Shown here one piece after another: positions 6,587 to 63,400 of a DNA stretch of 64,000 bases. A model generated the notes under the pieces. It searched no databases and was not told where the DNA came from. It was given only the letters and a program-made list of their open reading frames with translations. The stretch is taken from the NCBI RefSeq assembly GCF_902459465.1, contig NC_047063.1, forward strand, positions 1,116,001-1,180,000, written 5' to 3'. Each line of letters opens with the position of its first letter. The stretch's first letter is position 1. Position numbers and translations under genes: made by a program. Origin of the DNA: Asterias rubens. Taxonomy: Eukaryota.

Positions 6587-7394
6587 ATCAAAGTTCTTCA
6601 AGGGTTTGAGTCAACATGCATCATGATCTCGCTGATCAGCAAAACTGGATAGCAGGAACATTAATAGTTCTTATAAAGTGCTGTATCACACCCAACAGCA
6701 TCTAGCAATGCTCCCAACAAATATGAAGCGCATATTCGAATTATAAGACCTATTTGTACAGCACACTTTGTTTCTTGTATACTCGGGTTATTATAATACC
6801 ATTTTAGTAGCAACAAATGACTTGAGTTTACAGAGTATCGTTATCGCTTCCCAAGAAAATTACTACCTGACTTCAATTTGTTTGGGTTTGGTAACAGCTT
6901 CTACTCCAGAAGACGATCAGAGCATACTGATCAAAGCGTCAAGTTGAAACCAACGGTTCTTTTTAGAACCATCCCAACTAATTTAAAGATAGTCATTGCA
7001 TGGTGTCACCGCAAACCTTTTCATATCATATAGCCACACATATCTTTATAGAAAGAAGTGCAGGTTTCTTTTGTGTAAGCTTTACTTTTGACAGGGTTTG
7101 CCTGTACATTTTTCAGTGACTAGCTAGGGGATCGGTTAACTTGTCATTAAGTAGCCCACTAGTTTTTATCACTGGTTTATCTTTCATAGATAGGGATTCT
7201 TTTCAACACTAGTCAATCGGACAACTTGGACCAAATTTTGACTTGTTCAGAGGTATATAAACTAGCAATAGCATTTGGCCAGCAGAAAATGCCAGCTGAA
7301 GTAAATGAGAAATATGTAAACATATGTTAAAGCTGGAATTACATTGGAAACCCAGTTATTTATCATTGTATGTTTATCGTCTGAACCAAGGCCA

Positions 7395-22949: not shown

Positions 22950-25900
22950 TCAAGAGTTTTGGTAGTTGTAGTGATGTGGCTGTGTGTTATACATCCCATT
23001 ATAAGCACCGTTATAATAATCTTCTTGATGAAATCCTGGGGGAATATACTGGTTATGATGATCGACTTGGTTGGGAGTTGTAAATGATGTGTAGTCAGGC
23101 ACCCCATAATAACTAGCAGATGGCTGCAGCTCATAGGGACTTGGTAACCACCAGCCATGGGCTATAGCTGAGTCATACCGGTAGTCAGGGTGCCGGGTCT
23201 GCTGGGGTTTATTATCACCACTGCCCTCGCTTGACAAATCATCATCAGGTGAATCTTGGCTTTCAGCAGAACTTACGTCATCAGAACCAGAGTCCGTTGA
23301 ACCAACATCAGAATCAATAGCTACACTTTCAGGTTTAAGGTATTGCGTGTAGGACTGCCAAATTGGATCAGCGCCCAGGTTTGACTCATCTGGACATGTC
23401 TTGTCAGAAGAGTCAACAGAGTCTGTCTGCAATGGATCCTTTGAAGTCCTTGTTCTCCCTGGTGCATTTGAAGTTACCCTAGTTGGTTTGGTCCAAGTTG
23501 GCTTGCAACCAGAACCTTGAGATTTTCCACAGATTGATCTTTTGACAGCTGGCAATGGACTGAATGTTTTTTGTGATGGTGCTGTTTTATCAACGCAGTT
23601 TTTACTTCTCACAGCCTCTGTCGGATTGCGTTGTCTTATGTGCCATGGTCTGACAGACACAGTTTCAGGGATGTGATTACTAACATTTTGTTCAGGTAAA
23701 GATGTACTTGTTTGATGCATAGGAGCACTGTGCATCTTTGTTCTTATGCCATCAACAACCAATGGCTCTTCCGTAGCATCATCACATTCGCTACTATCGG
23801 AATTATTGGCAGCTGAAAAACCATCAGTGTTTTCAGGTACAAGACTACTGTGGAAATCTTGAGATGGCCTCCATGAAAAGCAAACTTTCTCTTTCATTTC
23901 CGATGTTTCTGTTTTCATTGACATTTGATCGTTCTTTTCACATCTATCTCCCTCCTGCACGGCTACACTTACTGCACTCTCTGCAGAAACATTCCTTTCT
24001 CTTGAATTGGCAAGGCTGTGGTTAATGGGAACAAAAACTGCATTGATTCTGTCATCTTCTTCATAGGCTATTTTGAAGTCATTCTCGCTTATAGATGATG
24101 CCATCGATGGTGAGTCAGCCACTCTAAAGTCAGAAGATATTCTCTTGGTCATCTCTTCTTCTTTCTCCTGGAACGGAGTGTCTCCGTCATCTTTAGTCTT
24201 GGATGTTGCCGTTGATAAACCAAAAGGTTTCAGTCTTTTATCGTCTTCTTGCTGGACAATATCCACATCATCTTTACTCTCGGATGCTGTCCTGTATGAG
24301 TGATAAATCTTCTCTCCTTCAGTGACTGCATTGTATAGAGAAGAAGTCCCAGCTAGGACCTCATCTCCAAGCTCATTGCTGGGAACAGCAAAATCATTGC
24401 TCATGTTCAAAGTACCCACCAATGTTACATCAGCTGTTCCTCCGTTAACATAACCCCTGCCAATCGATCTTACATTGGTTACTGTCCCTTTACTTGTGAC
24501 CCCTACATCATTCTCATTGCCACCTTTGTCATCAGTTGTTGCATTATGAGATGACGTAATGCTCCTTAGACTCTTTGGATTAACCCCTTCTTGGCTGAGT
24601 GTTTCTGCATTGAATGATAACAGTGAATCTTTCTTCATTTGATTTGTCCCCGAGTTGTCACTCCCTGGTTCTTCTGATTGCGATGGTATTACAACATCTC
24701 CTCCAGGATCACTCAACGCAACTACAGTCTGGACTAATCCAGCGTTCCGATACCGTTCTCTAAATCCGTCATCTTGAAGATGCGATGTAACATCACAGCA
24801 TTCTCTACATCCGCTCATAAACTGTTCAAAATCTGCAGTGGCTTTCTGCCAGGTCCATGTATCTTGTTGAGATCTCCGTCCAACTTTCTCAGCCAAGGAG
24901 GGAATCTTGAAATTGATTGGGCTTCGTATGTTGAATGGTATACTGTGATTGTTAATCCCACTCATTGTGAAGGTCGAGGGAGTTGTATCATGTGATTTCA
25001 GAGGTGGTTTAACTGCAAAGTTTGATTCGGGATTCTTGCCAATATTGCCTGCCGGACCATTTAGACTCATTGGACCAAAATCCTCCCTTGCTCTCTCACA
25101 AGAGGGCGCTCTCTCCAGTGTCTTTGAATGCTCATAGTCGTTGATCTCTGATTGTGATTCATCGGTTTCTTCAAACTTGTTGTCATCTGAGATATTCTCT
25201 GTGTCATTCCCATCGCATGTAACGGATGATCCACTATTGGCTGTCACATCTAACTCATTCACAATGACATCAATGGAATTCACCAAGTCTGATGGCACAG
25301 GGTCTGTTTAGATGAGAAGAAAAACAAAGAATATGTACATCACATTACTTGCATCAAATTCTCAATATATAATACAAATAGTTTAAGTTTTATTATTGCC
25401 TTCATACTAAACAATAAGTTCTTATGTATATATAGGCTGTCTATCGCTAAGCATTAATGACTATGTAGAGCAAACAAGATAAAAACAAATGATGCAGGCA
25501 CAACTCGATGGATCAAGAGAAGGTAGATAGCTCATCAAAAAGAGTGAGTTCTGACACAGGCTCGCTCATGAGAGATGAGACCAACTCTGGCAGTGATTTG
25601 TCGTCCACAGAAACGACATGAGAGTTCTTATGTAGTGCTTTAAATACCTGTGTCTCAAATATTTTAATCTTTAAGACAGGTACGCCCAGTTTGTGAATAA
25701 TGATACCCATTTATATACCACCTTGTAATGATTTACAAGGTGATGTGGCACACTCTCCTGCAAATCCAATTCTTAATCTAATGAGATTTATGGAGACACA
25801 ATGTACTCTCTCCCTGAGTCTGATGCTATCGACCGTTAGGCCATGGGATGCCACAAAGGGACCGAGGCCCAACCGCATGACTTGGGTCAGGAGAAATAAT

Positions 25901-28900
25901 AGATGCTTAAAGGCACTGGACACTATTGGTAATATATAAACTTACTTGGTTAAACAAGCAATGGAGAGCTGTTGATAGTATAAAACATTGTGTGAAACGG
26001 CTTCCTCTGAAGTGATGTATATTTTGAGAAAGAAGTAATTTTGCACTAAAATATTTGAATTGATTTTGAGACCTCAGCTGAGGTCTCAAAGACAAGCATC
26101 TGCAACCACAAAACGTGTGCGAGTAAGGGTGTCTTTTCTTCCATTATTCTCTCACAACTTTGACGACTAATTGAGCTCAATTTTTCACAGGTTTGTTATT
26201 TTATGCATATGTTGAGATACACCAAGTTGGAAGACAAGTGGTCTTTGACAATTACTAAAGGTGTCCAGTGCCTCCTTTAAGTGTCTCGCTCAAGGACACA
26301 AGTGTTATGATCAGGATTTTAACCCACAATCGTATGACTAGGCTATCTGAACTTGAGCCCGATGCTCTAGACCACTAGACCACGACATGCCAAAAGAAAC
26401 TTATGCCTCATCGAACCCACACTCCAATGACAAGGCCAGCCAAACTTTAGGTCATGTATCAACAAGTTTCTATGAATATAACCTACCTGGCAAGACCCGT
26501 AGTTTGACTCGGCACTGTCGCTGGATGTTTCTCAGCAATGATTCCTCGTTCCCCTCGCTGGCCAGTGTGACTGCAACACCCTTACTGCCGAAACGACCAG
26601 CCCTCCCAATGCGATGAAGATAAGTCTTACCATCAGAGGGTACGTCTAGGTTCACGATGAGGTTGACATTCTCTGCATCAATGCCTCTGGCTGTCTGCAT
26701 TAGAGAAAAGGACATTCCAATCTATAAAAAAATCATCTACAAAAAAAGGAATTAACTGCTACTGCCCATCACTGCATTTTAATTAAAATAACAATAGATA
26801 CTTATGAGGTGCTTTTTAATCGTCATATCAAAGTGCCTTCCACTATTACTGCCCCAGTTCATTGGGCATTAAGAATTCCTAAAACCTTCTCAACTCCTTA
26901 GGAGTATGCAGCACAGGCAGCCAAAATGGCACACAGTTTGCTAATCATTCACATCAACAACCTCTACCCTCACAGGTACCCATTTTACTCCTGGGTGATG
27001 AGAAGCAATTATAGTTAAGTATATTGCCTAAAGAACACAAGTGCCACAACCAGGATCCTGGGACCACTATCCTCATTGCTAGAGAAGAAGAAAAAAGAGA
27101 GCATGATTTCTTTATGTCTACAGAAAGTGATAGTTTTTCTTCATGAGGCAGATATAAAATAGTTTTAATTCAGATTAATATCTGCCATCCCTGATGAACC
27201 CCCCCCCCCAGAAATTTGATAGCTCTGAAAAAGAAGCCCCAGCTGGAGGTTACTTCCACAATTAAACACAAAATGCACACTCACCAAATCAGTTGATATG
27301 AGAACACGACACTGAAATGTCTTGAGCATTGACATTGCATTGAGTCTGTGGGTCTGGTCTTGGTTGCCTGATATACAAGTACTTGGCCATCCATTCTCGC
27401 ATAAGATATCTGAGAGATTTTGAGCTCTGAAAACAAATAATAAATAAATATAAAAATGAAGCTATTCATCTTAGAATGAGTGCCAACAAATTGTGCCTGC
27501 TGGAAGTCAAGGCCCGGGAGCCCTTTTGTTAACATGCTCCCCTCCCCCAACCTATGTTTGCACAATAGTGAAGGTGCATACAAGGATTTTTGTAAAGGCC
27601 ACAAAATAAATGATAATTAAAGGAACACGGTCGAGTTGGTCTTTGAAAAGCGTTCTGTAACTGTTTGTTATAAAATCGGTATGGTTAGAAAGATATTGTA
27701 AAAGTAGAATACAATGATCGACACAAATATGCCTCGAAATTGCGTGGTTTTCGTTTTACCTCGTCGACAAACACGGTCGGCCATTTATGGGAGTCAAAAA
27801 TTTGACTGCCATAAATGGCCGACCGTGTAAGTTCGCGACGTAAAATGAAAACCGTGCAATTTTGAGTGATACTTGTGTGGATACTTGTGTGGATCATTAT
27901 ATTCTACTTTAAAACATCTTTCTAACCATATGCATTTCATAACAAACGGTTTCAAACGCTTTTCATAGACCAACTCGTCCGATCCAAGGCAACGTGTTCC
28001 TTTAAGCTTGTGTGTGGCTAACGGCCCTTTGGAGTAAAAGTTCCAATGTACAATTGAGATAAACTACTTTAGCTACCCGGACTGAAGCTAAGAAACTGGA
28101 TCTCAGACAGTTTAAGCTTTGTTTACTTGCATGTACTGACTGTACAATTGCTGTCTGGGGTGGTGAGAGCTAGTGGTGCAATGTTGTACAAACGAGAAAA
28201 ATGAGTGATCGATAGGCTCGATATAAAAAAAAAACAGAATAGAAATTCAATTTTGGTTTTTACCCATACACCGCTGCGTGTCAGCACTGTATACTCAGTA
28301 CTTTCCCGAGTCCTATGAAAAAATATCACAGGCATGTTACTCGGGTGGGATTCGAACCCACGACCTTTGCAATTCTAGAGCAGTGTCTTACCAACTAGAC
28401 TACCGAGGTTGCCCGGCAGCTAGAGGCAGTTCGAATCCTGCCCGATTAGGATTCGAACTGCCTCTAGCTGCCGGGCAACCTCGGTAGTCTCGTTGGTAAG
28501 ACACTGCTCTAGAATTGCAAAGGTCGTGGGTTCGAATCCCACCCGAGTAACATGCCTGTGATAGTTTTTCACAGGACTCGGGAAAGTACTGAGTATACAG
28601 TGCTAACACACATCGGTGTATGGGTAAAAACCAAAATTGATATTCTTTATCCCCGATGCAAATTTGACATCTAGAATAGAAATTGTTATGGTTTAGTTTT
28701 TCCTCACACTGATCAGAACAAAAATGAAGTCTGTACAAATTGTCCTCACAACAAGGTATTAAAGACACTGGACACTATTGGTAATTGTCAAAGACCAGTC
28801 TTCTCACTTGGTGTATCTCAACATATATGCATAAAATAACAAACCTGTGAAAATTTGGGCTCGATTGGTAGTCGAAGTTGCGAGATAATAATGAAAGAAA

Positions 28901-31900
28901 AAACACCCTTGTCACACGAAGTTGTGTGCTTTCAGATGCTTGATTTCGAGACCTCAAAATCTAATTATGAGGTCTCAAAATCAAATTCGTGGAAAATTAC
29001 TTCTCTCTCAAAAACCTTGTATTTCAGAGGGAGCCGTTTCTCACAATGTTTAAGACTATCAACAGCTCTCCATTACTTGCTACCAAGAAAGGTTTTATGC
29101 TAATAACTATTTTGAGTAATTTCCAATAGTGTCCACTGCCTTTAAGAATATCCTCCATTCCCTTGTCCTCCCCCCTGGACACTCAACTAACCTGCTGGAT
29201 AGATTGGAGAAGACCAGACACTGGCTAAATGACATCTGAGTTAGTAACTGCAGTAAGTGGTTGACCTTGATCTCAAATGCCTTGTGGTATAAACCATGAC
29301 CAGGAACCACTTTGTAGAACTGCTTGATGCCTGTTAAAAACATAAAAATTGAAACAAAGATATATTAGCGTGGCGTGTCGTGGCTAAGCAGTAAAGAGCA
29401 CCAGACTCAAGCTCTGGTGTTTCTGATCAGCAGAGTGTGGGTTCAAGTCCCAGTTGTGACACCTGTGTCCTTAAGCAAGACAATTAACCATGATGCTTCG
29501 ACCTTCAGATGGGGCATAAAGCAGTGGTCCTGTGTTTGTGTAACGTAAAAGAACCCAGTGCACGTATCGAAAAAGAGAAGGGGTTCACCCTGCTGTTCCT
29601 GGTTTGATCAGCAACATATTGCCACACCACTTTGTAAACCATTACAGGGTGCTTTAAAGAAATAGGCCCATACTTCAAAATGTAGCTCCACATACCTTGC
29701 AGGAAAAAATGCTGAGCGTTTTGATACGTCCCTTAGGGATGTGATAAAGCGCTATATAAGAACCAAGTATTACTATAAGAAGACTTTTGAACACTTTGTG
29801 GACAAGACATACAAGATAATTGCTCATTGTGTACAAACTTCTGTAGCATGTGCACATCTTAAAGACACCAGATCTACACAGTACCTTTAAGAGCCAGATG
29901 CCTAGGGTTTAGTCGTACAAATGTTGGATCTCTCATGTAGGTAGTCAAGCTCTTAGCTAATGCTTCAGGGTATGTTGCTGACAGGGCCAACATCTGCTTG
30001 CTGACTGGTAAGCGGTTATATATCCAGCTATAAAGCAAGAACATGAAATAAGAATGAAATGACCTTGCCCTCTCAAAGATGACAATTCCATGTGGAGGTA
30101 TTGAGGTTCAGGGTGGTGAGATTGGGTCGGTGAAGGCTGGGGTGGTGAAGGCTGGGGTGGTGACGTTGGGGTGGTGAAGGTTGGGATGGTGAGGTTGGGG
30201 CGGTGGAGGTTGTGACAGTGGAAGTTTGGGTGTTGAGGTTGGGATAATGGAGTTTGGGGTGGTGAAGGTTTGGGGCAGTGGTAGTTTGGGGCAGTGAATG
30301 TTTGGATGGTGGAGGTTGGGGTGGTGAGTAATTAGTGGTGAGGTTGGGGATTGTGACTCACTGAAAGGGTTAAGGTCAAACATTGTTCCCTACCTCTTCT
30401 GTAAGAGTGAACTTACTTGATTTGGTCTTGAAACTTCTCATCCAATAGTTTATCGGCCTCATCCAGGACAAAGAGTCGAATGCCGTCAGTTGGCATGGCA
30501 TCATATTCAATCAATTGCTTCACTCGTCCTTCAATGTTAAAACAAAGGTCAACTTAGAAAGGTTTCAAACAGATGCATTTCGCTTACATGTACCACACAC
30601 TTTAGACTTGTGATGGATTCAGAAATACAAAATATTCATTCTGGGAGGTGATAGGTTAAATGGGATTGGACAACAATGCAAGGTGAATAGAACCAAAATG
30701 CACAGTTTATGACCAGGCATTGCAATGGTTTGCTTAATGAATGTCACTGTAAATACAATAGAATTGGTGCAGTCAGCCAGAAAAAGGTGCCACAATCAAA
30801 TCTGCCATGTTGAAATACTCAGAAATCTTGGCACACACTTTCCTAATTTAAGCCATGGTTCATCCAGGTTCTTCCAGTCAAAGACTGTTGGGGAGGATCA
30901 AGAGTTAGGATTATCAAAACTACCTGGTCCTGATCAATAAATTGTTTATTTTGTGAGGAATACAATCTTGACAATGATGAGTTTATTGACAGGTAACGAG
31001 TGAAGGGTGCGAATTAAAGACCCCTTACATAGGCTGCCAACACTAATGTCCACGCGTGAAGAGCTATCGTTGGCTGAGAGTCAATGCAAGGAGTCCATTG
31101 AAACTATTTGTTGCCCGGATGATGTAAGCCATTACCTGGTGTGCCAACAGCCACATGGCATTTCTTCAGCTTTTGACGATCAGGCCCAAATAATGTCCCT
31201 CCAATGAACGTGTGACATCTTAGACCTTGCAAACATCCCCCAATGGCCTGTATAACACCTTGGACCTGTGTAGCAATCTCTCGTGTTGGAGTCAAGACAA
31301 GAGCTTGAACATTCCCACACTGAAGATCCAGACTCTCCAAGATTATCACGCTGAAAACACATGTCTTCCCCGTTCCTGCTTTAGCTTGTACAATCAAATC
31401 TGTAGTTTTCATATAGGAAAAAAAACGTCAAATTGATTAACATGCTCATCATAAAAAAAATACCAAAGTCTTTTTATGGGTAACTATAAATCATAGATAC
31501 AACTTCAACTACAATGCATTGTTGGCCCCTGGCCCAATTTCACCAAAACTTTCCCCACATACTCAATATACATCCATAATGCTTGTATTTCCTTTTTGTT
31601 GAGTGAAATAAATAAAAAAATCGTAAAAAAATGAAATTTTCTGCTCGGTACTCACTGTTGTTTTTCTGTTGCATCGCACGTTTTTTGACTTCTCAATATG
31701 CTCAACGCTTTATCTTTTGGCCACTCCCATGCGCTGTACACCAGCCTACTCGTCGAACTGCCGAGCCACAACTGAGTTGGACTAAACCATTTTGTAGAAG
31801 GGGTGTTGTTGTGCGGCAGTGTGTGTGCGCTTTATGCGTGAACGGCAGGCATCGTAAGCGGACAGCACGCCCGTCTTGCCGCGTAACACCCCTTCTACAA

Positions 31901-32857
31901 AATGGTTTAGTCCAACTCGGTCGTGGCTCGGTAGTTCGGCGAGTAGGCTGGTGTACAGCGCTTGGTGATCGAGTGACCAAAAGATAAAGTGTTGAGCATA
32001 TATAGAAGTCAAAAAACGTGCGATGCGGCAGAAAAACAACAGTGAGTACCGAGCAGAAAATTGCATTTTTTGACGATTTCTTTTTAGTTCCACTCAACAA
32101 AGAGGAAATACAAGCATTATGAATGTATATTGAGTATGTGGGGAACGTTTTGGTAGTGTAGTACAAAGGAAACTTCAGTTATTGATGGCTAATGGTCGTA
32201 AAACTTTCACCTATCAACGCTGATTTGAAAAACGTATAGCGTTAAGGAGGCCCAAATTATTAGACCCCTAGGCTCACTAGGCTCACAGGGGAGCCTTATT
32301 AGTTTCTAGAAGTACAGTACAACCTAACCAGTTGCTATCGTAAATTAAGTGTTACTATATAAGTAACAATACAATAATTAATCGTAACCCTCATCAATTA
32401 AAAGTCAAATATTATATTCAAACACCAAAGTCAAACATATTTTTGGATAACATTCCGTATGGCGCCACCACTTTTTCACTAATTTTTACAAAAAAGGATA
32501 TCTCATTGAGGTAAATTAGATACTATATTATTTCATATCGAATGAAAAAGTGGTGGCGCCATACGGAAACTTTTCCATATTTGTTTTCTAAATATTGGAT
32601 AAACACTAAACATGCAGCACTATAGGCCTGTGTAATTGGAAGTTTTTCACCAAATATGATTCATTACCAAGGCCACATCTCCCAATGGGTATTGCTTTCA
32701 ACTGGATTGGTGACGGACGCTCAAAACCCGCAAGTGACAGGCCTTTCAAAACGTCTCCAGACAACAACAACGATGCAAAATCAATGTTGACATTCTCGAC
32801 ATTTAAAACATCGCTAGTGCGGTCTTTCGAAGCGTAATCGTGTGCCGTTTTCGACAT
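22950..32857 (-). CDS. DDX20: DEAD-box RNA helicase DDX20 (Gemin3), 8 coding exons, about 1183 aa
   Basis: Exons 32857-32668, 31399-31136, 30528-30417, 30027-29885, 29330-29192, 27426-27285, 26694-26487, 25303-22950 (3552 nt, phases consistent). Motifs [74 protein letters not shown]. An in-frame upstream ATG at 32899 is possible. Confidence 0.96.
25911..26276. mobile_element. TTAA-flanked non-autonomous DNA element (Kolobok-like termini), family A copy
   Basis: ttaa|AGGCACTGGACAC ... GTGTCCAGTGCCT(CCT)|ttaa. Superfamily label is inferred from the TTAA target and AG..CT ends. Confidence 0.75.
27621..28001. mobile_element. TTAA-flanked non-autonomous DNA element, family B
   Basis: ttaa|AGGAACACG ... 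CGTGTTCCT|ttaa, with an internal hairpin CACGGTCGGCCATTTATGG ... CCATAAATGGCCGACCGTG at about 27772-27827. Confidence 0.75.
28247..28640. repeat. Near-perfect palindrome of two head-to-head tRNA-derived repeat units
   Basis: Arms 28247-28439 and 28448-28640 (193 bp each, about 6 mismatches, no net indel), 8-nt loop. Each arm has A-box-like (TAGTCTAGTTGGTAAG) and B-box (GGTTCGAATCCC) motifs. Confidence 0.9.
28763..29141. mobile_element. TTAA-flanked element, family A copy
   Basis: ttaa|AGACACTGGACACTATTGG ... CCAATAGTGTCCACTGCCT|ttaa; internal sequence matches 40771-41148. Confidence 0.8.
29371..29776 (+). mobile_element. tRNA-derived SINE
   Basis: A-box-like TGGCTAAGCAGT, B-box GGTTCAAGTCCC, body matching 37820-38240, tail AAAGCGCTATATAAG...TATTACTAT. 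Confidence 0.75.
30095..30352. repeat. G/T-rich degenerate tandem repeat (about 15-bp unit GGGGTGGTGAAGGYT) in DDX20 intron 3
   Basis: Repeated GGGGTGGTGA(A)GG runs. Explains the spurious Pro/His-rich ORF 30108-30383. Confidence 0.85.
31542..32315. mobile_element. Foldback-type element with long inverted arms in DDX20 intron 1
   Basis: Arms at about 31542-31807 and 31885-32155, about 77-bp spacer. The right side continues to 32315 and matches 55107-55576 in reverse. Confidence 0.75.
32453..32568. mobile_element. Small MITE-like inverted repeat
   Basis: TTCCGTATGGCGCCACCACTTTTTCA ... TGAAAAAGTGGTGGCGCCATACGGAA, perfect 26-bp inverted ends. Confidence 0.7.
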
Positions 32858-33295: not shown

Positions 33296-36200
33296 ATGTC
33301 GCATCAAACCGGAATTAAAGGTGAAATTTATGAATTGAAATTGAGTTGAGTTGAGGCCTTGAAAATCAAGTCCACGGTGGTCTACGTCTCTGTTCCTGTT
33401 TTGTTTGTGTATTTTGATTTGGTGGCTATTTAAAACCGGGCGGAGAGACATTTTTCTCAGACAGATCCAGACTTCTAATTTTGTTGAAAATGCATAGAAT
33501 AATAAATGATATTTTTATATTTGTTTGTTTGACTTTGATTATTTATTTCTGATTTTTATTTGTTTGCCCATATTTCTCTCAGGTTCTATCACTTTTTATC
33601 ATTATTGTGATGACGTTCACCCCGGCCCACATTTATGTTTAGTTCACGCCCACTGGTCATGGTGTTATGAACACCTGGCTTTTTATAACTTCTACCGCCG
33701 TATCTCACTCATTCACAATGATTTCAGACAATAAAAACCTTTTAACTATTCTAATTATGAGTGCATCAGTGACTGTTTTGTAGTCAGTTTTCTCGCTATC
33801 GGGCAAATCAGCAAACCATAGAGCAGCAGGGCCAGTCAAACGTAAACCTAGTGACAAAACCTTTTTATCGGCTGCAAAGTCTCGCAGTTTACTATAACTT
33901 TCTAGTCTACACAAAAATAAGTCAAGATCTTCAGTGCCAGAGTAAGTATCCCTAAACTTTAATTCATATTTGCTCGCCATTATAATAGAAATATGATAAA
34001 ATTGCAATGTGGCATAGTAATCAAAATACACAATTTGCACAATAAAATAAAATATACGCCAGGGGAATACAAGAAAACAAATTAAATATAACAAGTTAAA
34101 TACCTTTTGCATCCCCAAGCGGATCTGCGTCCTTCGGCCAACCGGCAGGGTGCGCCACCGGGAGTTCATACCCGCATTCTCCACCATATGTTATGGACGG
34201 TTTGGCCTCCTCAGCCATCCCGCCCAAGGGACCGAACTTATCAATTAAACACAACTTAAACGTTCTTCTTCTTGAAAACGTAGACCCACAATAGGGTGTT
34301 TTATTTAAACACAACTCAAATGAAATACTAGAAAATATACTTAATAAATAATATACGAATAATGCACCGTCGTCTCGGTGGCGCACCTGAAGGATACAGA
34401 CCACGAGTCGACGTTGGGTGTGCCTTAAATACTTAACTATTACATAACATCCACCATGGGGGCATGTTAACCTTTATGGAAAAGCCAGGTGTTCATAATC
34501 ACCATGACCAGTGGGCGTGAACTAAACATAAATGTGGGCCGGGGTGAACGTCATCACAGTATCAGTTATTGTTACAATTTACATTGAACAAACAAAAAGT
34601 CGTTGACCAGGACTCAAGAATCAAAGGCACTTTGATCATACAGCCAGAACTTGAGTTCGTTGACTTTGTTATCTGTGAAAGTACCCCACCAACTGTATTT
34701 ATTTTTTAGCCCTTGTCATTTGTCAGACGTACACATGTAATTTAAACAAATCACTAGTTTTGCTTTAAAACAGATCTGGCTAGTATTTAAAGGGCAGTTT
34801 TCTGCTTGTCTTATTTTATGATAAATTTGCCCCAAATACATTTATGTACAAATGAAATTTACATTACATTAATGCATCGTACTGTTTACCCTTGATTTCT
34901 AAAGCGTCTGATGAGCTCAAGCAGGTGTTTGCAGATTGTAGAGAGAAGGACTACAGAGTGGTCAAAGTTGGCATTGATATCGGTCAGTATAGAGTTACTT
35001 CATCCAGGCCTAGTGGTGTATTACTCTTGGTAACAATTTGATCAACCACTCAAAATAATTTAAGTGTCAAGCACAAGTACATGTTATGTAACACAATGTG
35101 GGACAGTGTGTGATTTTGAAGGAGGACAGTTAGTAGTTACTCTAGCACTACGTTAAGAAATCTACTGCGATGATCTCAAACGGAAGCTTGAGTAAATTTT
35201 TCTTTTTGCCCACACCCAGAAGATCTTTCTATTCAGACAGCCTGTTGTTTGCCATATAAAGACATCATTGATAGTTGCATCAAGGATAATGCATTTCTTA
35301 TGTTTTGAGGAGCACTGTATGCTCAGCGCATCCGAGTCTTACAGAGACAAAATCCACAGGCTTCTCAGATGGGTCGTTGACCCAAAGAGCCTGTGGGTTT
35401 GTTTGTAGAGACGTGGCAAATTAATGTAGTACATCTTTTGAGCAGTTGAGTTATTGTGTGTTGAGTGCCTGCAGTTTTTGAAGGTAACGCTCGTGGATCA
35501 CATGCTATACAAATATTGACAGATTCATGTGCCACAGTTATTCCCAGAACAACCTGCTGTCAATTTCACAAAGAGTTAGGACTCGTCTTATCTCAAGTAG
35601 CTCGTCCTAACTTAGGATTAATCTTAAGGTATATATGCTACAGTGCAGGGTTGGGACTTGTCCTAAGTCCTAAGATTAGTCTTAAGTTATGAAGAGTTTT
35701 GTGAAATCAACGGCTGTTTCCCCTCAGCTTTGCCTCATGGAAAAACAAATATTGCTGGGATCACTGACAGAGTCCCAGTTTTAACCATTGGAGGACTAAA
35801 GGCAGTCAATATTTGTTGTATAACGCCCCATACTGCCTAGACATCTGGGTAGCAAGTAGCTGTCTTTGCTATGGTTATTGGTTGCTATGAGTGTAGTTTA
35901 TTGGTTGCCACGGGTTTAGTAGCTACACGTCAAGGTCATTGTGCTTGCTTGGCTTTCTAGTAAAACAAGACATTTGGGTGCTGTAAACCAATCAGACACA
36001 GCATTAACGGTGTTATAATATAAGACCATTTCTAAATATGATTATTCCTGATTTTCCAATCTTGTCTTTGTTTACAGGAGAAGAAAAGTTGATTTCATTG
36101 GGACATCAGGGAGCCACAGGGACATGGGAGCAAGATATCCTTTTTATTACCTCTGCCCCTTAAACTGTGACACTTTGGGAATTTGGAAATCCAAATTTCA

Positions 36201-44264: not shown

Positions 44265-44436
44265 AAGCCACTTTGGAGTTCCAGCTGCTCATGTCTGTTA
44301 CTGCTGACAATGGACTTTGTCTATCTCCCATCACCTTTTGACAATACCAGCGGGTATTGTCAAAAGGTTACGGGAGATAGACACAATCCGTTGTCAGCAG
44401 TAACAGACATGCGCCACTGACATTCCGAAGTGGCTT
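44265..44436. repeat. 172-bp foldback hairpin
   Basis: Arms 44265-44348 and 44353-44436, loop AGCG. Inner stem CTTTTGACAATACC / GGTATTGTCAAAAG is perfect. Confidence 0.85.
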
Positions 44437-60400: not shown

Positions 60401-63400
60401 TGCTTTACCATCTGACAGGGCCTCGTTGTTCTTGGTGGACAGGAAACTCAGCTTGTCTTCAGCTCCAATAAAGATAGAGAAGAAGACTGGTTCTGCTCTC
60501 AGGTATTTATCTCTTTGGAAATAAACAAAGTTGACGTCCTGACATTTTAACCCCAGCAGAGTCTTTTCAAAGGCTTTCTCTATGAGAAAGACTGCTAGTG
60601 TGGAAACGTCAGGCCTTTAACTATTTTGTACATTTATACCATAGGTCCTTTCAGTTTTTGAAGGCAGTGGACACTATTGATAATTACTCAAAATAGTTAA
60701 TAGCATAAAACCTTACTTGGTAACAAGTAATTGGGAACTGTTGATATAGTATAAAACATTGTGAGAAACAGCTTGCTCTGAAGTAGCGTAGTTCTTGAGA
60801 AAGAAGTATTTTTCAAAGCATTTGATTTCAAGACCTCTTATTTAGATTTTGAAGTCTCAAAATCAAGCATCTGAAAGCACACAAAGTCTGCGTGTGACAA
60901 GGGTGTTTTTCTTTCATTATTATTTCACAACTTCGATGTTGTTATTTTAAGCATATGTTGAGATACACCAAGTGAGAAGACCAATTGTGTCCAGTGTCTT
61001 TGAGCAGTTTGCAGTGTCAGCTAAAGATATGATGTAAAGGTGGACAGTCTGAAACCAAGGGAGGTAGTTTGTCAACTTCCTACAACTGGGAGCTAATATC
61101 GATTGTTCACCCAAAATAAACCTTGCTAGATTTGTTTTACTATAATGCCATACTTCTCTAGTTCAGCATCATTGAGCTTTGGAAAGCACTGATTGACATT
61201 TATGTATGACATCTTCTTTCTGTGCGTGTGTAACACAGATGTTGTAATTTGTTGTGTTTTATTTGCATTGATTGTTTCTTTCTGTGTAGTGTGGTGCACA
61301 TAACTTCAAGAGGAGAGAATATTGCTTCAAGTGTAGCATCAGCAAAGATGGTAAGAATCGTGTTAACTTGTGACTGGAGTTTTACGGAGCTGACTACTAG
61401 GTTAATTACCAAATCAAGATACAAACTGGGTGTGTTTGATGATAACTGTGGATAAGCATTGTTTGTTCGACTGCAGAGTCTGAGATTTGTTTGTCCAACT
61501 AAGGTCAAGTGATGCCAACTTGCTTGCCGTTCCACCTTCCAGGTTGAAAGCTTATGGGGATAGAAGTTTCTCGGTTGCAGCCCCCCGCCTGTGGAACGGC
61601 TTGCCTCTCACCCTTAGATCACAACCTGACATTTTTTCATTCAAATCTAAACTCAAAACTTACCTCTTCAGTCTAGCTTACACATAACTTTTCCCTTGGT
61701 CATATTTTAGCGCAGTGAATAGTTTTTTTTTGATAACAGCGCTTTATAAGATTGATTTATTATTATTATTATTATGTAGTCCAACACACTAGTGCCTAGT
61801 TCTAGTTTTGTCAGAGTGAACTCCTGCCATGGCACTTATGCATTTGAGCAAGTAACTTGTCAAAATTTGCTGCGTCCTTTGGATTGGATGTAAAACCATT
61901 TGTCCCTTTTGTTGTGTAAAAGAACCTAACAGATGTAAAAGAACTTAACAAGCTCGGATAGTGTATTTTTGTATAACTTTATTTTCATTTTTTAGTCTTA
62001 TTTCGAACTTTAGTTCTGAGAAGTGCAAAGAGCTCTTAATAATTTAAGGAAAGCAGTGTTTATTTCTTGAAACCATCATATGCAAACTAGATTTCTAAAC
62101 ATTCACCTCTAATGATCACTTGTAAAACTTCTTGTAACCCTTTTATATTAATCCTTGTTATTCAATATTTGTAAATTTTGGTTTGTCCTTTTCATTTAAT
62201 ATGCTTTTTGATTTGTTTTTCTTAAAGATTCGGAACGCTACAGTGAAATAGGCCAGGTAGCATCTAACGGTAAGATTTGAATGAATTGTTTTTGTAAACA
62301 ACTTTTAACAATTCTGCTCTGGAAAGGGTCCCTATTGTATTTCTTTCTAATTCTTTCTCTAATGCTTTGTCGTTGTGTATCATGAGTGCTCCTGTTTTCC
62401 TTTCAGTTTTGATTCTAATGGGCCTGGATGCTCTGACAACGGAAGAAACCGTCACCAAAGTCTTGGAGTACACGTCCTCAGCCAAGATGAACATCAGCAT
62501 AGCGCGGGATTCGATCACGCGCACATCACGTGGTTATTGCTACGTAGAGATGGATACTGTTGAAACGGCCACTCATCTCATGAATATATTGGCCTCCATG
62601 CAACCACCATTTCAGATAGATGGAAAACAGGGTAAGCATTGTGATAACGATTGGAAAAGGAGGTTGGATGCTTTAAAGGCATTGGACACATTTGGTAATT
62701 GTCAAAGACCATTATTCTCACTTGGTGTATCCCAACATATGTATAAAATAACAGATCTGTGAAAATTTGGGCTCAAATCAGTCATCGAAGTTGCAAGAGA
62801 ATAATGAAAGAAAAAAAAGCTGTGCTCTCAGATGGATAATAAAAGGCTTCAGGCCTGAAGTCTTTTATTATTTTTGGTGAGAAATTACCTCTTACCCCAA
62901 AACTACGTTATTTCAGAGGGTACCGTTTCTCAATTTTTGTTGTTATACTATCAACAGCTCTCCATTGCTTGTTACCAAGTAAGTAATTACCAATAGTGTC
63001 CAGTGCCTATAATCTCCATGCCCCCATTGAAAGAGGCAATGTTAACTGTCAGGATTTAATCTGGGTTAGACAGCTAGTTGGTAGAGCAGGTTGGTTACAG
63101 GTTTAAATCCTGTTTTTCTTTATTTCCCCAAAAGTTGACTGTGATTTAATTTACAATGTTTAAAGTGTCTCTTGTTTTATTCTTTCTTCCCGTGGTCAGT
63201 GTCCGTACATTTTTGTAAGCAGAACATTCCAGAGAGACCTGAGGTGGCTGCCCCAGTAGTCGCTGAACCCCAGTGGCCAGCTTCTGTAAGTAGTCATTAG
63301 CTTCTCACTAGTCTAGCACAAACTTTTTCATTTGTCAAAGATGATGAACAGGAAATATTATGTGCAGTGAAAAGAAACTTTAAAATATTGCCAGAATTTA

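What the first reader, a model, noticed from the sequence alone, without database searches (positions are those of the whole stretch)
33606..34558. Gypsy-type LTR retroelement fragment closed by an inverted copy of its own LTR end, giving a TIR-like 953-bp unit
Seen, minus strand: a 370-bp TG...CA LTR; a 16-nt PBS whose plus strand reads CCCGCATTCTCCACCA, which I recognise as the 3' end of tRNA-Ala(AGC) plus CCA; about 80 codons of capsid-like gag; about 60 unexplained bp; then a 78-bp inverted copy of the LTR start (one indel), so the unit reads TGTGATG...CATCACA. Flanks TTAT and GTAT resemble a 4-bp TSD with one mismatch. Established: LTR elements have direct repeats, and DIRS elements have inverted termini but no tRNA PBS, so this fits neither. 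Inference: a cDNA with two U3 ends still presents CA-3' termini to integrase. It may be an aberrant reverse-transcription or integration product, or a member of a non-autonomous LTR-derived family with inverted ends. It lies antisense in twinfilin intron 1, with the LTR pointing at the DDX20/TWF promoter about 1 kb away.
Basis: partly seen in the sequence, partly recalled or inferred. Interest (0 to 1): 0.75.

Follow-up and report, generated by a model that had tools for sequence, protein, structure and literature searches.

The report
Broken retrotransposon with inverted LTR tip
A dead 953-bp stump of a Gypsy-like retrotransposon in the first intron of twinfilin is closed by an upside-down copy of the first 78 bases of its own LTR. 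It is most likely a one-off accident of insertion or repair, not a new kind of mobile element.

Summary
The described anatomy is real. On the minus strand the unit reads:
- a 370-bp TG...CA LTR (34558->34189);
- a TA spacer;
- a 16-nt primer-binding site (34186->34171) identical to the complement of a published tRNA-Ala(AGC) 3' fragment;
- a 190-nt leader;
- the first 74 codons of a retrotransposon gag (33980->33759);
- 75 bp of unmatched filler (33758->33684);
- an inverted copy of LTR bases 1-79 with one base missing (33683->33606).

The gag piece is 70-73% identical to 253-264-aa proteins that carry Retrotrans_gag, Ty3-capsid-like and CCHC domains.

The proposed 4-bp target duplication (TTAT/GTAT) is not significant; a match this good arises by chance 6% of the time. 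The unit occurs once in the 64-kb window. It has no polypurine tract and no direct 3' R-U5, so it cannot replicate by the LTR-retrotransposon cycle. That argues against a mobile family with inverted ends.

Both outer ends are exact LTR 5' termini abutting non-element DNA. I favour a single aberrant insertion that joined two U3 ends to one target. Two convergent insertions followed by a deletion remain a close rival. The host genome could not be reached with any tool, so copy number and the empty site remain untested. Interest is low to moderate.

The parts
34189..34558 (-). Complete 370-bp LTR (TGTGATG...CATAACA). It has a TATA-like TATTTAA at 34431-34425 and AATAAA at 34305-34300.
   Evidence: The outer end is defined by the inverted repeat. 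The inner end is defined by CA followed 2 nt later by the PBS.
34171..34186 (-). Primer-binding site, 16 nt, complementary to the 3' end of tRNA-Ala(AGC) including CCA.
   Evidence: for position; the plus-strand reading equals the last 16 nt of tRF-60:76-Ala-AGC-6 in PMC10878346; the same 16 nt occur in a grass carp small RNA.
33981..34170 (-). 190-nt leader between the PBS and the gag ATG. Its first part (34163-34149) pairs with LTR bases 34387-34373, enclosing U5 and the PBS.
   Evidence: pair I5, 15 nt, 93%; the stem is present in both the MFE and centroid structures, z = -2.4.
33759..33980 (-). gag codons 1-74, open, ending inside the capsid (Retrotrans_gag) domain.
   Evidence: 73% identity to P0001, E = 1.5e-30. 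P0001 and P0002 pass the PF03732 cut-off, and the domain spans their residues 47-133.
33684..33758 (.). 75-bp filler of unknown origin between the gag break and the inverted arm.
   Evidence: no match to the rest of the unit beyond shuffles (p about 0.4); its one 20-nt match elsewhere in the window is no better than 14% of natural 75-mers achieve; no gag homology in any frame.
33606..33683 (+). Inverted copy of LTR bases 1-79 (78 nt, one base missing), ending exactly at the LTR tip TGTGATG.
33602..33605 (.). Left flank TTAT (candidate target duplication).
   Evidence: 3 of 4 match with the right flank, chance 0.06.
34559..34562 (.). Right flank GTAT (candidate target duplication).

Best explanation
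This is a one-off, immobile by-product of one retrotransposition event of a tRNA-Ala-primed Ty3/Gypsy-like element.

A DNA with an LTR 5' (U3) tip at both ends was joined to a single site in twinfilin intron 1. It could have been an aberrant reverse transcript or two cDNA molecules lying tail to tail.

One route is template switching. The growing plus strand leaves the minus-strand template at gag codon 74, copies about 75 nt from another template, then lands on plus-strand strong-stop DNA. It runs off that DNA's 5' end, which is LTR base 1.

The other route gives the same result. The U3 ends of two cDNAs are inserted together, and the unstable centre of the resulting inverted dimer is lost and patched with filler.

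Shown: the anatomy, the exact LTR tips at both host junctions, the PBS and the gag identity. Inferred: the route, the role of integrase, and that the event was single.
For: - Both outer ends are the LTR tip to the base, and neither abuts a purine tract. Both therefore look like element-host junctions of the 5'-LTR type.
- The arms differ by one indel and no substitution, as expected for copies of one template.
- The two natural tips of the LTR are near-identical (TGTGATG / TGTTATG), so an integrase could use two U3 ends.
- The family occurs nowhere else in the 64 kb, which makes two independent hits within 1.6 kb unlikely unless the site is a hot spot.
- Integrated retroviral proviruses with a deletion plus an inversion, and with unequal LTRs, are documented at 1-3% of proviruses and ascribed to template switching (PMC9278108).
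- Filler between breakpoints fits multiple template switches or end joining.
Against: - The flanks TTAT/GTAT are not a perfect duplication. A match this good arises by chance 6% of the time. A mutated duplication is about as improbable, because the 78-bp arms carry no substitution.
- The family's normal duplication length is unknown.
- The source of the 75-bp filler is unknown.
- There is no other copy, empty site, parent element or read data to examine.
- Insertion of two U3 ends in vivo is from my own knowledge a rare event, mainly known in vitro.
Confidence: 0.4

Rival explanations
1. Two separate insertions of the same young family landed close together in convergent orientation in this promoter-proximal intron. 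A later end-joining deletion removed everything between LTR base 79 of one and gag codon 75 of the other, leaving 75 bp of filler or leftover internal sequence.
For: - It explains the exact LTR tips at both host junctions and the imperfect flank match without any mutation.
- Large inverted repeats are known, from my own knowledge, to suffer central deletions.
- The site lies 0.3-1.3 kb from a bidirectional housekeeping promoter, a plausible hot spot.
- The window holds several other inverted structures.
Against: - It needs two hits of a family otherwise absent from 64 kb within about 0.6 kb of original intron, plus a deletion of both inner parts.
- The two LTR pieces show no substitution over 78 bp.
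Confidence: 0.25
2. Integrase-independent capture: fragments of linear cDNA were ligated into a chromosomal double-strand break by end joining, with their natural U3 ends facing the host DNA.
For: Capture of retrotransposon cDNA at breaks is an established pathway (Moore and Haber 1996 and Yu and Gabriel 1999, as cited in PMC11724301). It needs no target duplication and often adds filler.
Against: Both junctions sit exactly at the TG tip with no loss or gain of bases, which end joining does not guarantee. The 3-of-4 flank match would be coincidence.
Confidence: 0.1
3. The unit is a member of a mobile non-autonomous family with inverted LTR-derived ends, moved by the parent element's proteins.
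For: - It has terminal inverted repeats of 78 bp ending in TG...CA and a near-match of 4-bp flanks.
- The gag start is intact and the arms nearly identical, so the unit is young.
Against: - It has no polypurine tract and no direct 3' R-U5, so its RNA cannot complete reverse transcription by the LTR cycle.
- There is a single copy in the window.
- The 160-aa frame spanning the PBS to the filler has no near-identical match among 5.8 billion proteins.
- The arms are of very unequal length (78 versus 370 bp), typical of a breakpoint rather than of a selected terminus.
Confidence: 0.06
4. Assembly artefact: a chimeric join placed an LTR tip in the wrong orientation.
For: It cannot be excluded without reads. 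Repeats are frequent sites of misjoins.
Against: - The join is not a simple palindrome.
- The arm carries a private 1-nt difference.
- The flanks continue into a correctly ordered twinfilin exon 1 and exon 2.
- Flipping the segment between the arms yields the same kind of unit.
Confidence: 0.08

Closest known systems
Ty3/Gypsy-type (Metaviridae) LTR retrotransposons primed by a host tRNA
   Same: - A TG...CA LTR with short inverted tips.
- A PBS complementary to a tRNA 3' end, 2 nt after the LTR.
- A leader, then a gag whose relatives carry Retrotrans_gag, Ty3-capsid-like and CCHC domains.
   Different: - Only one full LTR.
- No pol, no polypurine tract and no direct 3' LTR.
- The far end is an inverted 78-bp LTR start.
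Defective integrated proviruses with a deletion plus an inversion, or with unequal LTRs (HIV-1, PMC9278108)
   Same: Integrated products of error-prone reverse transcription in which large parts are lost, segments are inverted and the two LTRs are unequal.
   Different: In the reported cases the outer ends are still U3 on one side and U5 on the other. Here both outer ends are U3.
Autointegration inversion circles of LTR retrotransposons (Ty1; SISYPHUS in Arabidopsis, PMC7197481)
   Same: They place two LTRs in inverted orientation, separated by a piece of the element.
   Different: - These products are circles.
- They join an LTR tip to an internal site.
- They are not expected in the chromosome.
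- Here the breakpoint lies inside the LTR at base 79, and the tips face host DNA.
DIRS retrotransposons
   Same: Inverted terminal repeats around a retroelement body (PMC3950715).
   Different: DIRS use a tyrosine recombinase and no tRNA primer site. This unit has a 16-nt tRNA-Ala PBS and a Ty3-like gag.
Retrotransposon cDNA captured at chromosomal breaks
   Same: Fragments of cDNA, often LTR-containing, are inserted in either orientation without the normal structure.
   Different: Here both junctions fall exactly at the LTR tips.

Membership tests
Ty3/Gypsy LTR retrotransposon | gag with a retrotransposon capsid domain and a CCHC knuckle | tested here: met
   Codons 1-74 match P0001 and P0002 at 70-73% identity (E = 1e-28 to 1e-30). 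Those proteins pass PF03732 and show PF19259 and CCHC matches. The fragment alone gives only Ty3_capsid E = 0.17.
Ty3/Gypsy LTR retrotransposon | tRNA-complementary PBS just inside the 5' LTR | tested here: met
   16 of 16 nt match a published tRNA-Ala(AGC) 3' fragment, 2 nt after the LTR CA. The host's own tRNA-Ala was not available.
Ty3/Gypsy LTR retrotransposon | Two LTRs in direct orientation, with a polypurine tract before the 3' LTR | tested here: not met
   There is one full LTR plus an inverted 78-bp piece. No direct second copy exists in 64 kb and no purine tract abuts an LTR start. This fits a broken derivative, not an intact member.
Ty3/Gypsy LTR retrotransposon | pol with the order protease, reverse transcriptase, RNase H, integrase | not testable with these tools
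   There is no pol in the unit.
Ty3/Gypsy LTR retrotransposon | Perfect 4-6-bp target-site duplication | tested here: inconclusive
   TTAT versus GTAT; chance of 3 of 4 or better is 0.06. The 5- and 6-bp readings do not match.
DIRS | No tRNA PBS; replication through a circle with an internal complementary region and a tyrosine recombinase | tested here: not met
   A PBS is present. The gag is of the Ty3 kind. The rest of the unit (33684-34558) holds no second copy of the LTR tip.
TIR DNA transposon or MITE | Terminal inverted repeats with a perfect duplication of fixed length, in many copies | tested here: not met
   The inverted repeats exist, but one arm is simply the start of an LTR with a PBS and gag behind it. 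The flank duplication is imperfect. A TA reading needs a mismatched terminal base. There is a single copy in the window.
Non-autonomous LTR derivatives (TRIM, LARD) | Two direct LTRs, a PBS and a polypurine tract around a non-coding core | tested here: not met
   Only the PBS is present.

The most novel reading that the evidence does not exclude
The unit is one copy of a family of short LTR-derived elements with inverted U3 ends. Such a family would spread by a route that needs neither a polypurine tract nor a 3' R-U5. That would be a new way for integrase-type retroelements to produce TIR-like non-autonomous offspring.
Probability: 0.06. Interest if true: 0.75.

Novelty: new member of a known kind. 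Interest (0 to 1): 0.25.

Why it matters
If the single-event reading is right, this locus is a natural fossil of a DNA with two U3 ends entering a chromosome. That outcome of reverse transcription and integration is seldom seen outside the test tube.

There are also practical consequences:
- The unit adds 953 bp to a 631-bp intron next to a bidirectional DDX20/twinfilin promoter.
- It places an LTR, with a TATA-like box, in the same direction as DDX20.
- It makes any transcript through it fold into an 80-bp double-stranded stem. Such a stem could feed small-RNA silencing of the parent family. All of these effects are inferred.

Otherwise it is an ordinary dead transposon fragment.

Tried and rejected
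The ENA and Logan contigs that encode the gag relatives P0001-P0010 could not be read, so no full-length parent was recovered.
- **Scans with the gag alignment** found no relative in the JGI metagenomes, IMG/VR or the prokaryotic genome set.
- **Exact searches** for the LTR tip found nothing in three collections, and the arm-filler junction was absent from the viral contigs. None of these collections holds the host genome, so the blanks say nothing about copy number in the host.
- **Origin of the filler.** I tested the rest of the unit on both strands, the gag relatives in all frames and the window. The one 20-nt match, in the DDX20 C-terminal exon, proved unremarkable.
- **Autointegration inversion circle:** rejected. 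The gag break is not joined to the U5 tip, and a circle does not explain LTR tips facing host DNA.
- **Nested insertion of one copy into the other:** rejected. The sequence outside both tips is not element sequence.
- **TA-duplication DNA transposon:** rejected.

Full report
**What is in the sequence.**
- The 953-bp unit at 33606-34558 is bounded by an inverted repeat. Bases 33606-33683 are the reverse complement of 34480-34558, with no substitution and one missing base.
- The unit occurs once in the 64-kb window.
- In its sense orientation, which is the minus strand of the window, it reads:
  - a 370-bp LTR (34558->34189) that starts TGTGATG and ends CATAACA;
  - a TA spacer;
  - the 16-nt TGGTGGAGAATGCGGG (34186->34171);
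  - a 190-nt leader;
  - an ATG at 33980;
  - an open frame to the stop at 33707-33705;
  - the inverted LTR start.
- The LTR contains a TATA-like TATTTAA (34431-34425) and an AATAAA (34305-34300).

**The primer-binding site.**
- The plus-strand reading CCCGCATTCTCCACCA is the last 16 nt of the fragment listed as tRF-60:76-Ala-AGC-6 (GCCCGCATTCTCCACCA) in PMC10878346.
- The same letters occur in a small RNA from grass carp (PMC4698583).
- The host's own tRNA-Ala was not available. The window carries only two tRNA-Ser(AGA) genes.
- A 15-nt stem pairs LTR bases 34387-34373 with leader bases 34163-34149 and encloses U5 and the PBS. It appears in the minimum-energy and centroid folds (z = -2.4). 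From my own knowledge this resembles the stems that bracket the PBS in retroviral leaders.

**The gag piece.**
- Alone, the 91-aa frame gives only a sub-threshold Ty3_capsid match (E = 0.17).
- The word search found proteins of 253 and 264 aa (P0001, P0002), all from ENA assemblies. They are 73% and 70% identical to codons 1-74 (E = 1.5e-30 and 1.7e-28).
- These proteins pass the Pfam cut-off for Retrotrans_gag. They also show Ty3-capsid-like and CCHC zinc-knuckle matches.
- A second search from P0001 added four more relatives (P0007-P0010) and no named one. The cluster tables give no accession or organism.
- Homology stops after codon 74 (33759), inside the capsid domain, which spans residues 47-133 of the relatives. 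No later part of gag is present in any frame anywhere in the window.
- "Gypsy-type" is thus supported by gag only. The pol order could not be tested.

**The filler.**
- The 75 bp at 33684-33758 match nothing. They show no excess similarity to the rest of the unit on either strand (shuffle p about 0.4).
- Their one 20-nt match in the window (25248-25267) is equalled by 14% of natural 75-mers from the same window.
- Beyond the arm, the true LTR continues with different sequence from that following the inverted copy, so the break is sharp at LTR base 79.

**The flanks.**
- The left flank ends TTAT and the right flank starts GTAT. Across the window, 6% of position pairs at this spacing match in at least 3 of 4 bases.
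- If a 4-bp duplication had been made, one of its eight bases must since have changed, although the 78-bp arms show no substitution. That is about as improbable as the chance match, so the flanks do not discriminate.
- Five- and six-base readings do not match.
- A TA reading requires the outermost bases of the repeat to mismatch.
- Neither tip abuts a purine tract, so both look like 5'-LTR-type junctions with non-element DNA.
- The flanks do not recur in the window.

- Twinfilin exon 1 encodes MSHQTGIK at 33297-33320 and is followed by GT.
- Exon 2 begins at 34905 after an AG and continues ASDELKQVF.
- A later exon matches solved twinfilin structures (1m4j, 7ccc).
- On the minus strand, the DDX20 first coding exon has its ATG at 32857. 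The next helicase exon matches solved DDX20 (2oxc, E = 1e-31) far better than eIF4A (E = 5e-21).
- Its LTR points towards twinfilin exon 1, the shared promoter and DDX20. The LTR has the same direction as DDX20.

**Can it be a mobile family?**
- An RNA started in this LTR would carry R-U5, the PBS, the leader, the gag stump, the filler and the inverted U3 start.
- That RNA has no 3' copy of R for the first strand transfer. It also has no polypurine tract next to a direct LTR start to prime the plus strand.
- By the established LTR-retrotransposon cycle it cannot be copied.
- The arms are very unequal (78 versus 370 bp), which is what a breakpoint gives.
- The 160-aa frame that spans the PBS to the filler has no near-identical match among 5.8 billion clustered proteins.
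- I put this reading at about 6%.

**How it most likely arose.**
- Both outer ends are LTR base 1 to the nucleotide. A chromosomal rearrangement would hit that base by luck only, so each end is most simply an original junction of a cDNA end with host DNA.
- Three routes give two such ends facing outwards:
  - (a) one event that joined two U3 ends to one target;
  - (b) two independent convergent insertions followed by a deletion;
  - (c) end-joining capture of cDNA pieces at a break.
- Route (a) can start from an aberrant reverse transcript. The plus strand leaves its template at gag codon 74, copies 75 nt elsewhere, then copies plus-strand strong-stop DNA to its 5' end, which is LTR base 1. 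That would explain why the inverted copy ends exactly at the tip.
- Route (a) can also start from two cDNAs whose U3 ends are inserted together, after which the centre of the inverted dimer is lost.
- Integrated proviruses with a deletion plus an inversion and with unequal LTRs are documented and ascribed to template switching (PMC9278108).
- Autointegration products with inverted LTRs are documented in virus-like particles (PMC7197481). These are circles, and their joints do not fit this unit.
- Capture of retrotransposon cDNA at breaks is also established (references in PMC11724301).
- I favour (a) at about 0.4. The family is absent from the rest of the window and the arms carry no substitution.
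- Route (b) stands at about 0.25, because a promoter-proximal intron may be a hot spot and (b) needs no mutated duplication.
- Route (c) is at about 0.1 and misassembly at about 0.08.

**Limits.**
- All collection scans were blank, and none of those collections contains the host genome.
- The host species was not identified.
Breaks are only described.

**Verdict.**
- The object is a rearranged dead fragment of a previously unnamed Ty3/Gypsy-like family. That is a known kind of thing with an uncommon end structure.
- Interest is 0.25.

Noticed in passing
window 28241-28646: A near-perfect palindrome: 199-nt arms, 96% complementary, 8-nt spacer. Each arm carries one tRNA-Ser(AGA) gene (28336-28409 minus, 28478-28551 plus). 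The tRNA pair is therefore an inverted duplication.
   Followed up: partly
window 25955-29079: Outer inverted repeats (25955-26273 versus 28763-29079, 83-91% complementary) enclose the tRNA-Ser palindrome and a further palindrome at 27656-27954. Together they form a foldback-like block of about 3.1 kb just downstream of the long ORF.
   Followed up: no
window 31542-32154: A palindrome of about 610 bp (arms 83-94% complementary) in a DDX20 intron. It yields mirror-image ORFs on both strands with no Pfam match. It is probably a foldback or MITE-like insert.
   Followed up: no
window 22950-25298 (minus): A 782-codon open frame, serine- and aspartate-rich and of low complexity, with no Pfam family. 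By position and strand it is probably the large divergent C-terminal exon of DDX20.
   Followed up: partly
window 34149-34163 and 34373-34387: A long-range stem between the start of the presumed R region and the leader just after the PBS encloses U5 and the PBS.
   Followed up: partly
window 6950-6996: A histone 3' UTR stem-loop (Rfam RF00032, 34.3 bits, just above threshold) on the plus strand suggests a replication-dependent histone gene nearby.
   Followed up: no
window 44265-44436 and 32444-32577: Further short palindromes with 4-6-nt spacers (86% and 75% complementary). Inverted structures are common in this stretch of genome.
   Followed up: no
window 62367-62762: An ORF with a weak RNA-recognition-motif match (PF00076, 21.8 bits against a cut-off of 20.7) is probably an exon of another host gene.
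   Followed up: no
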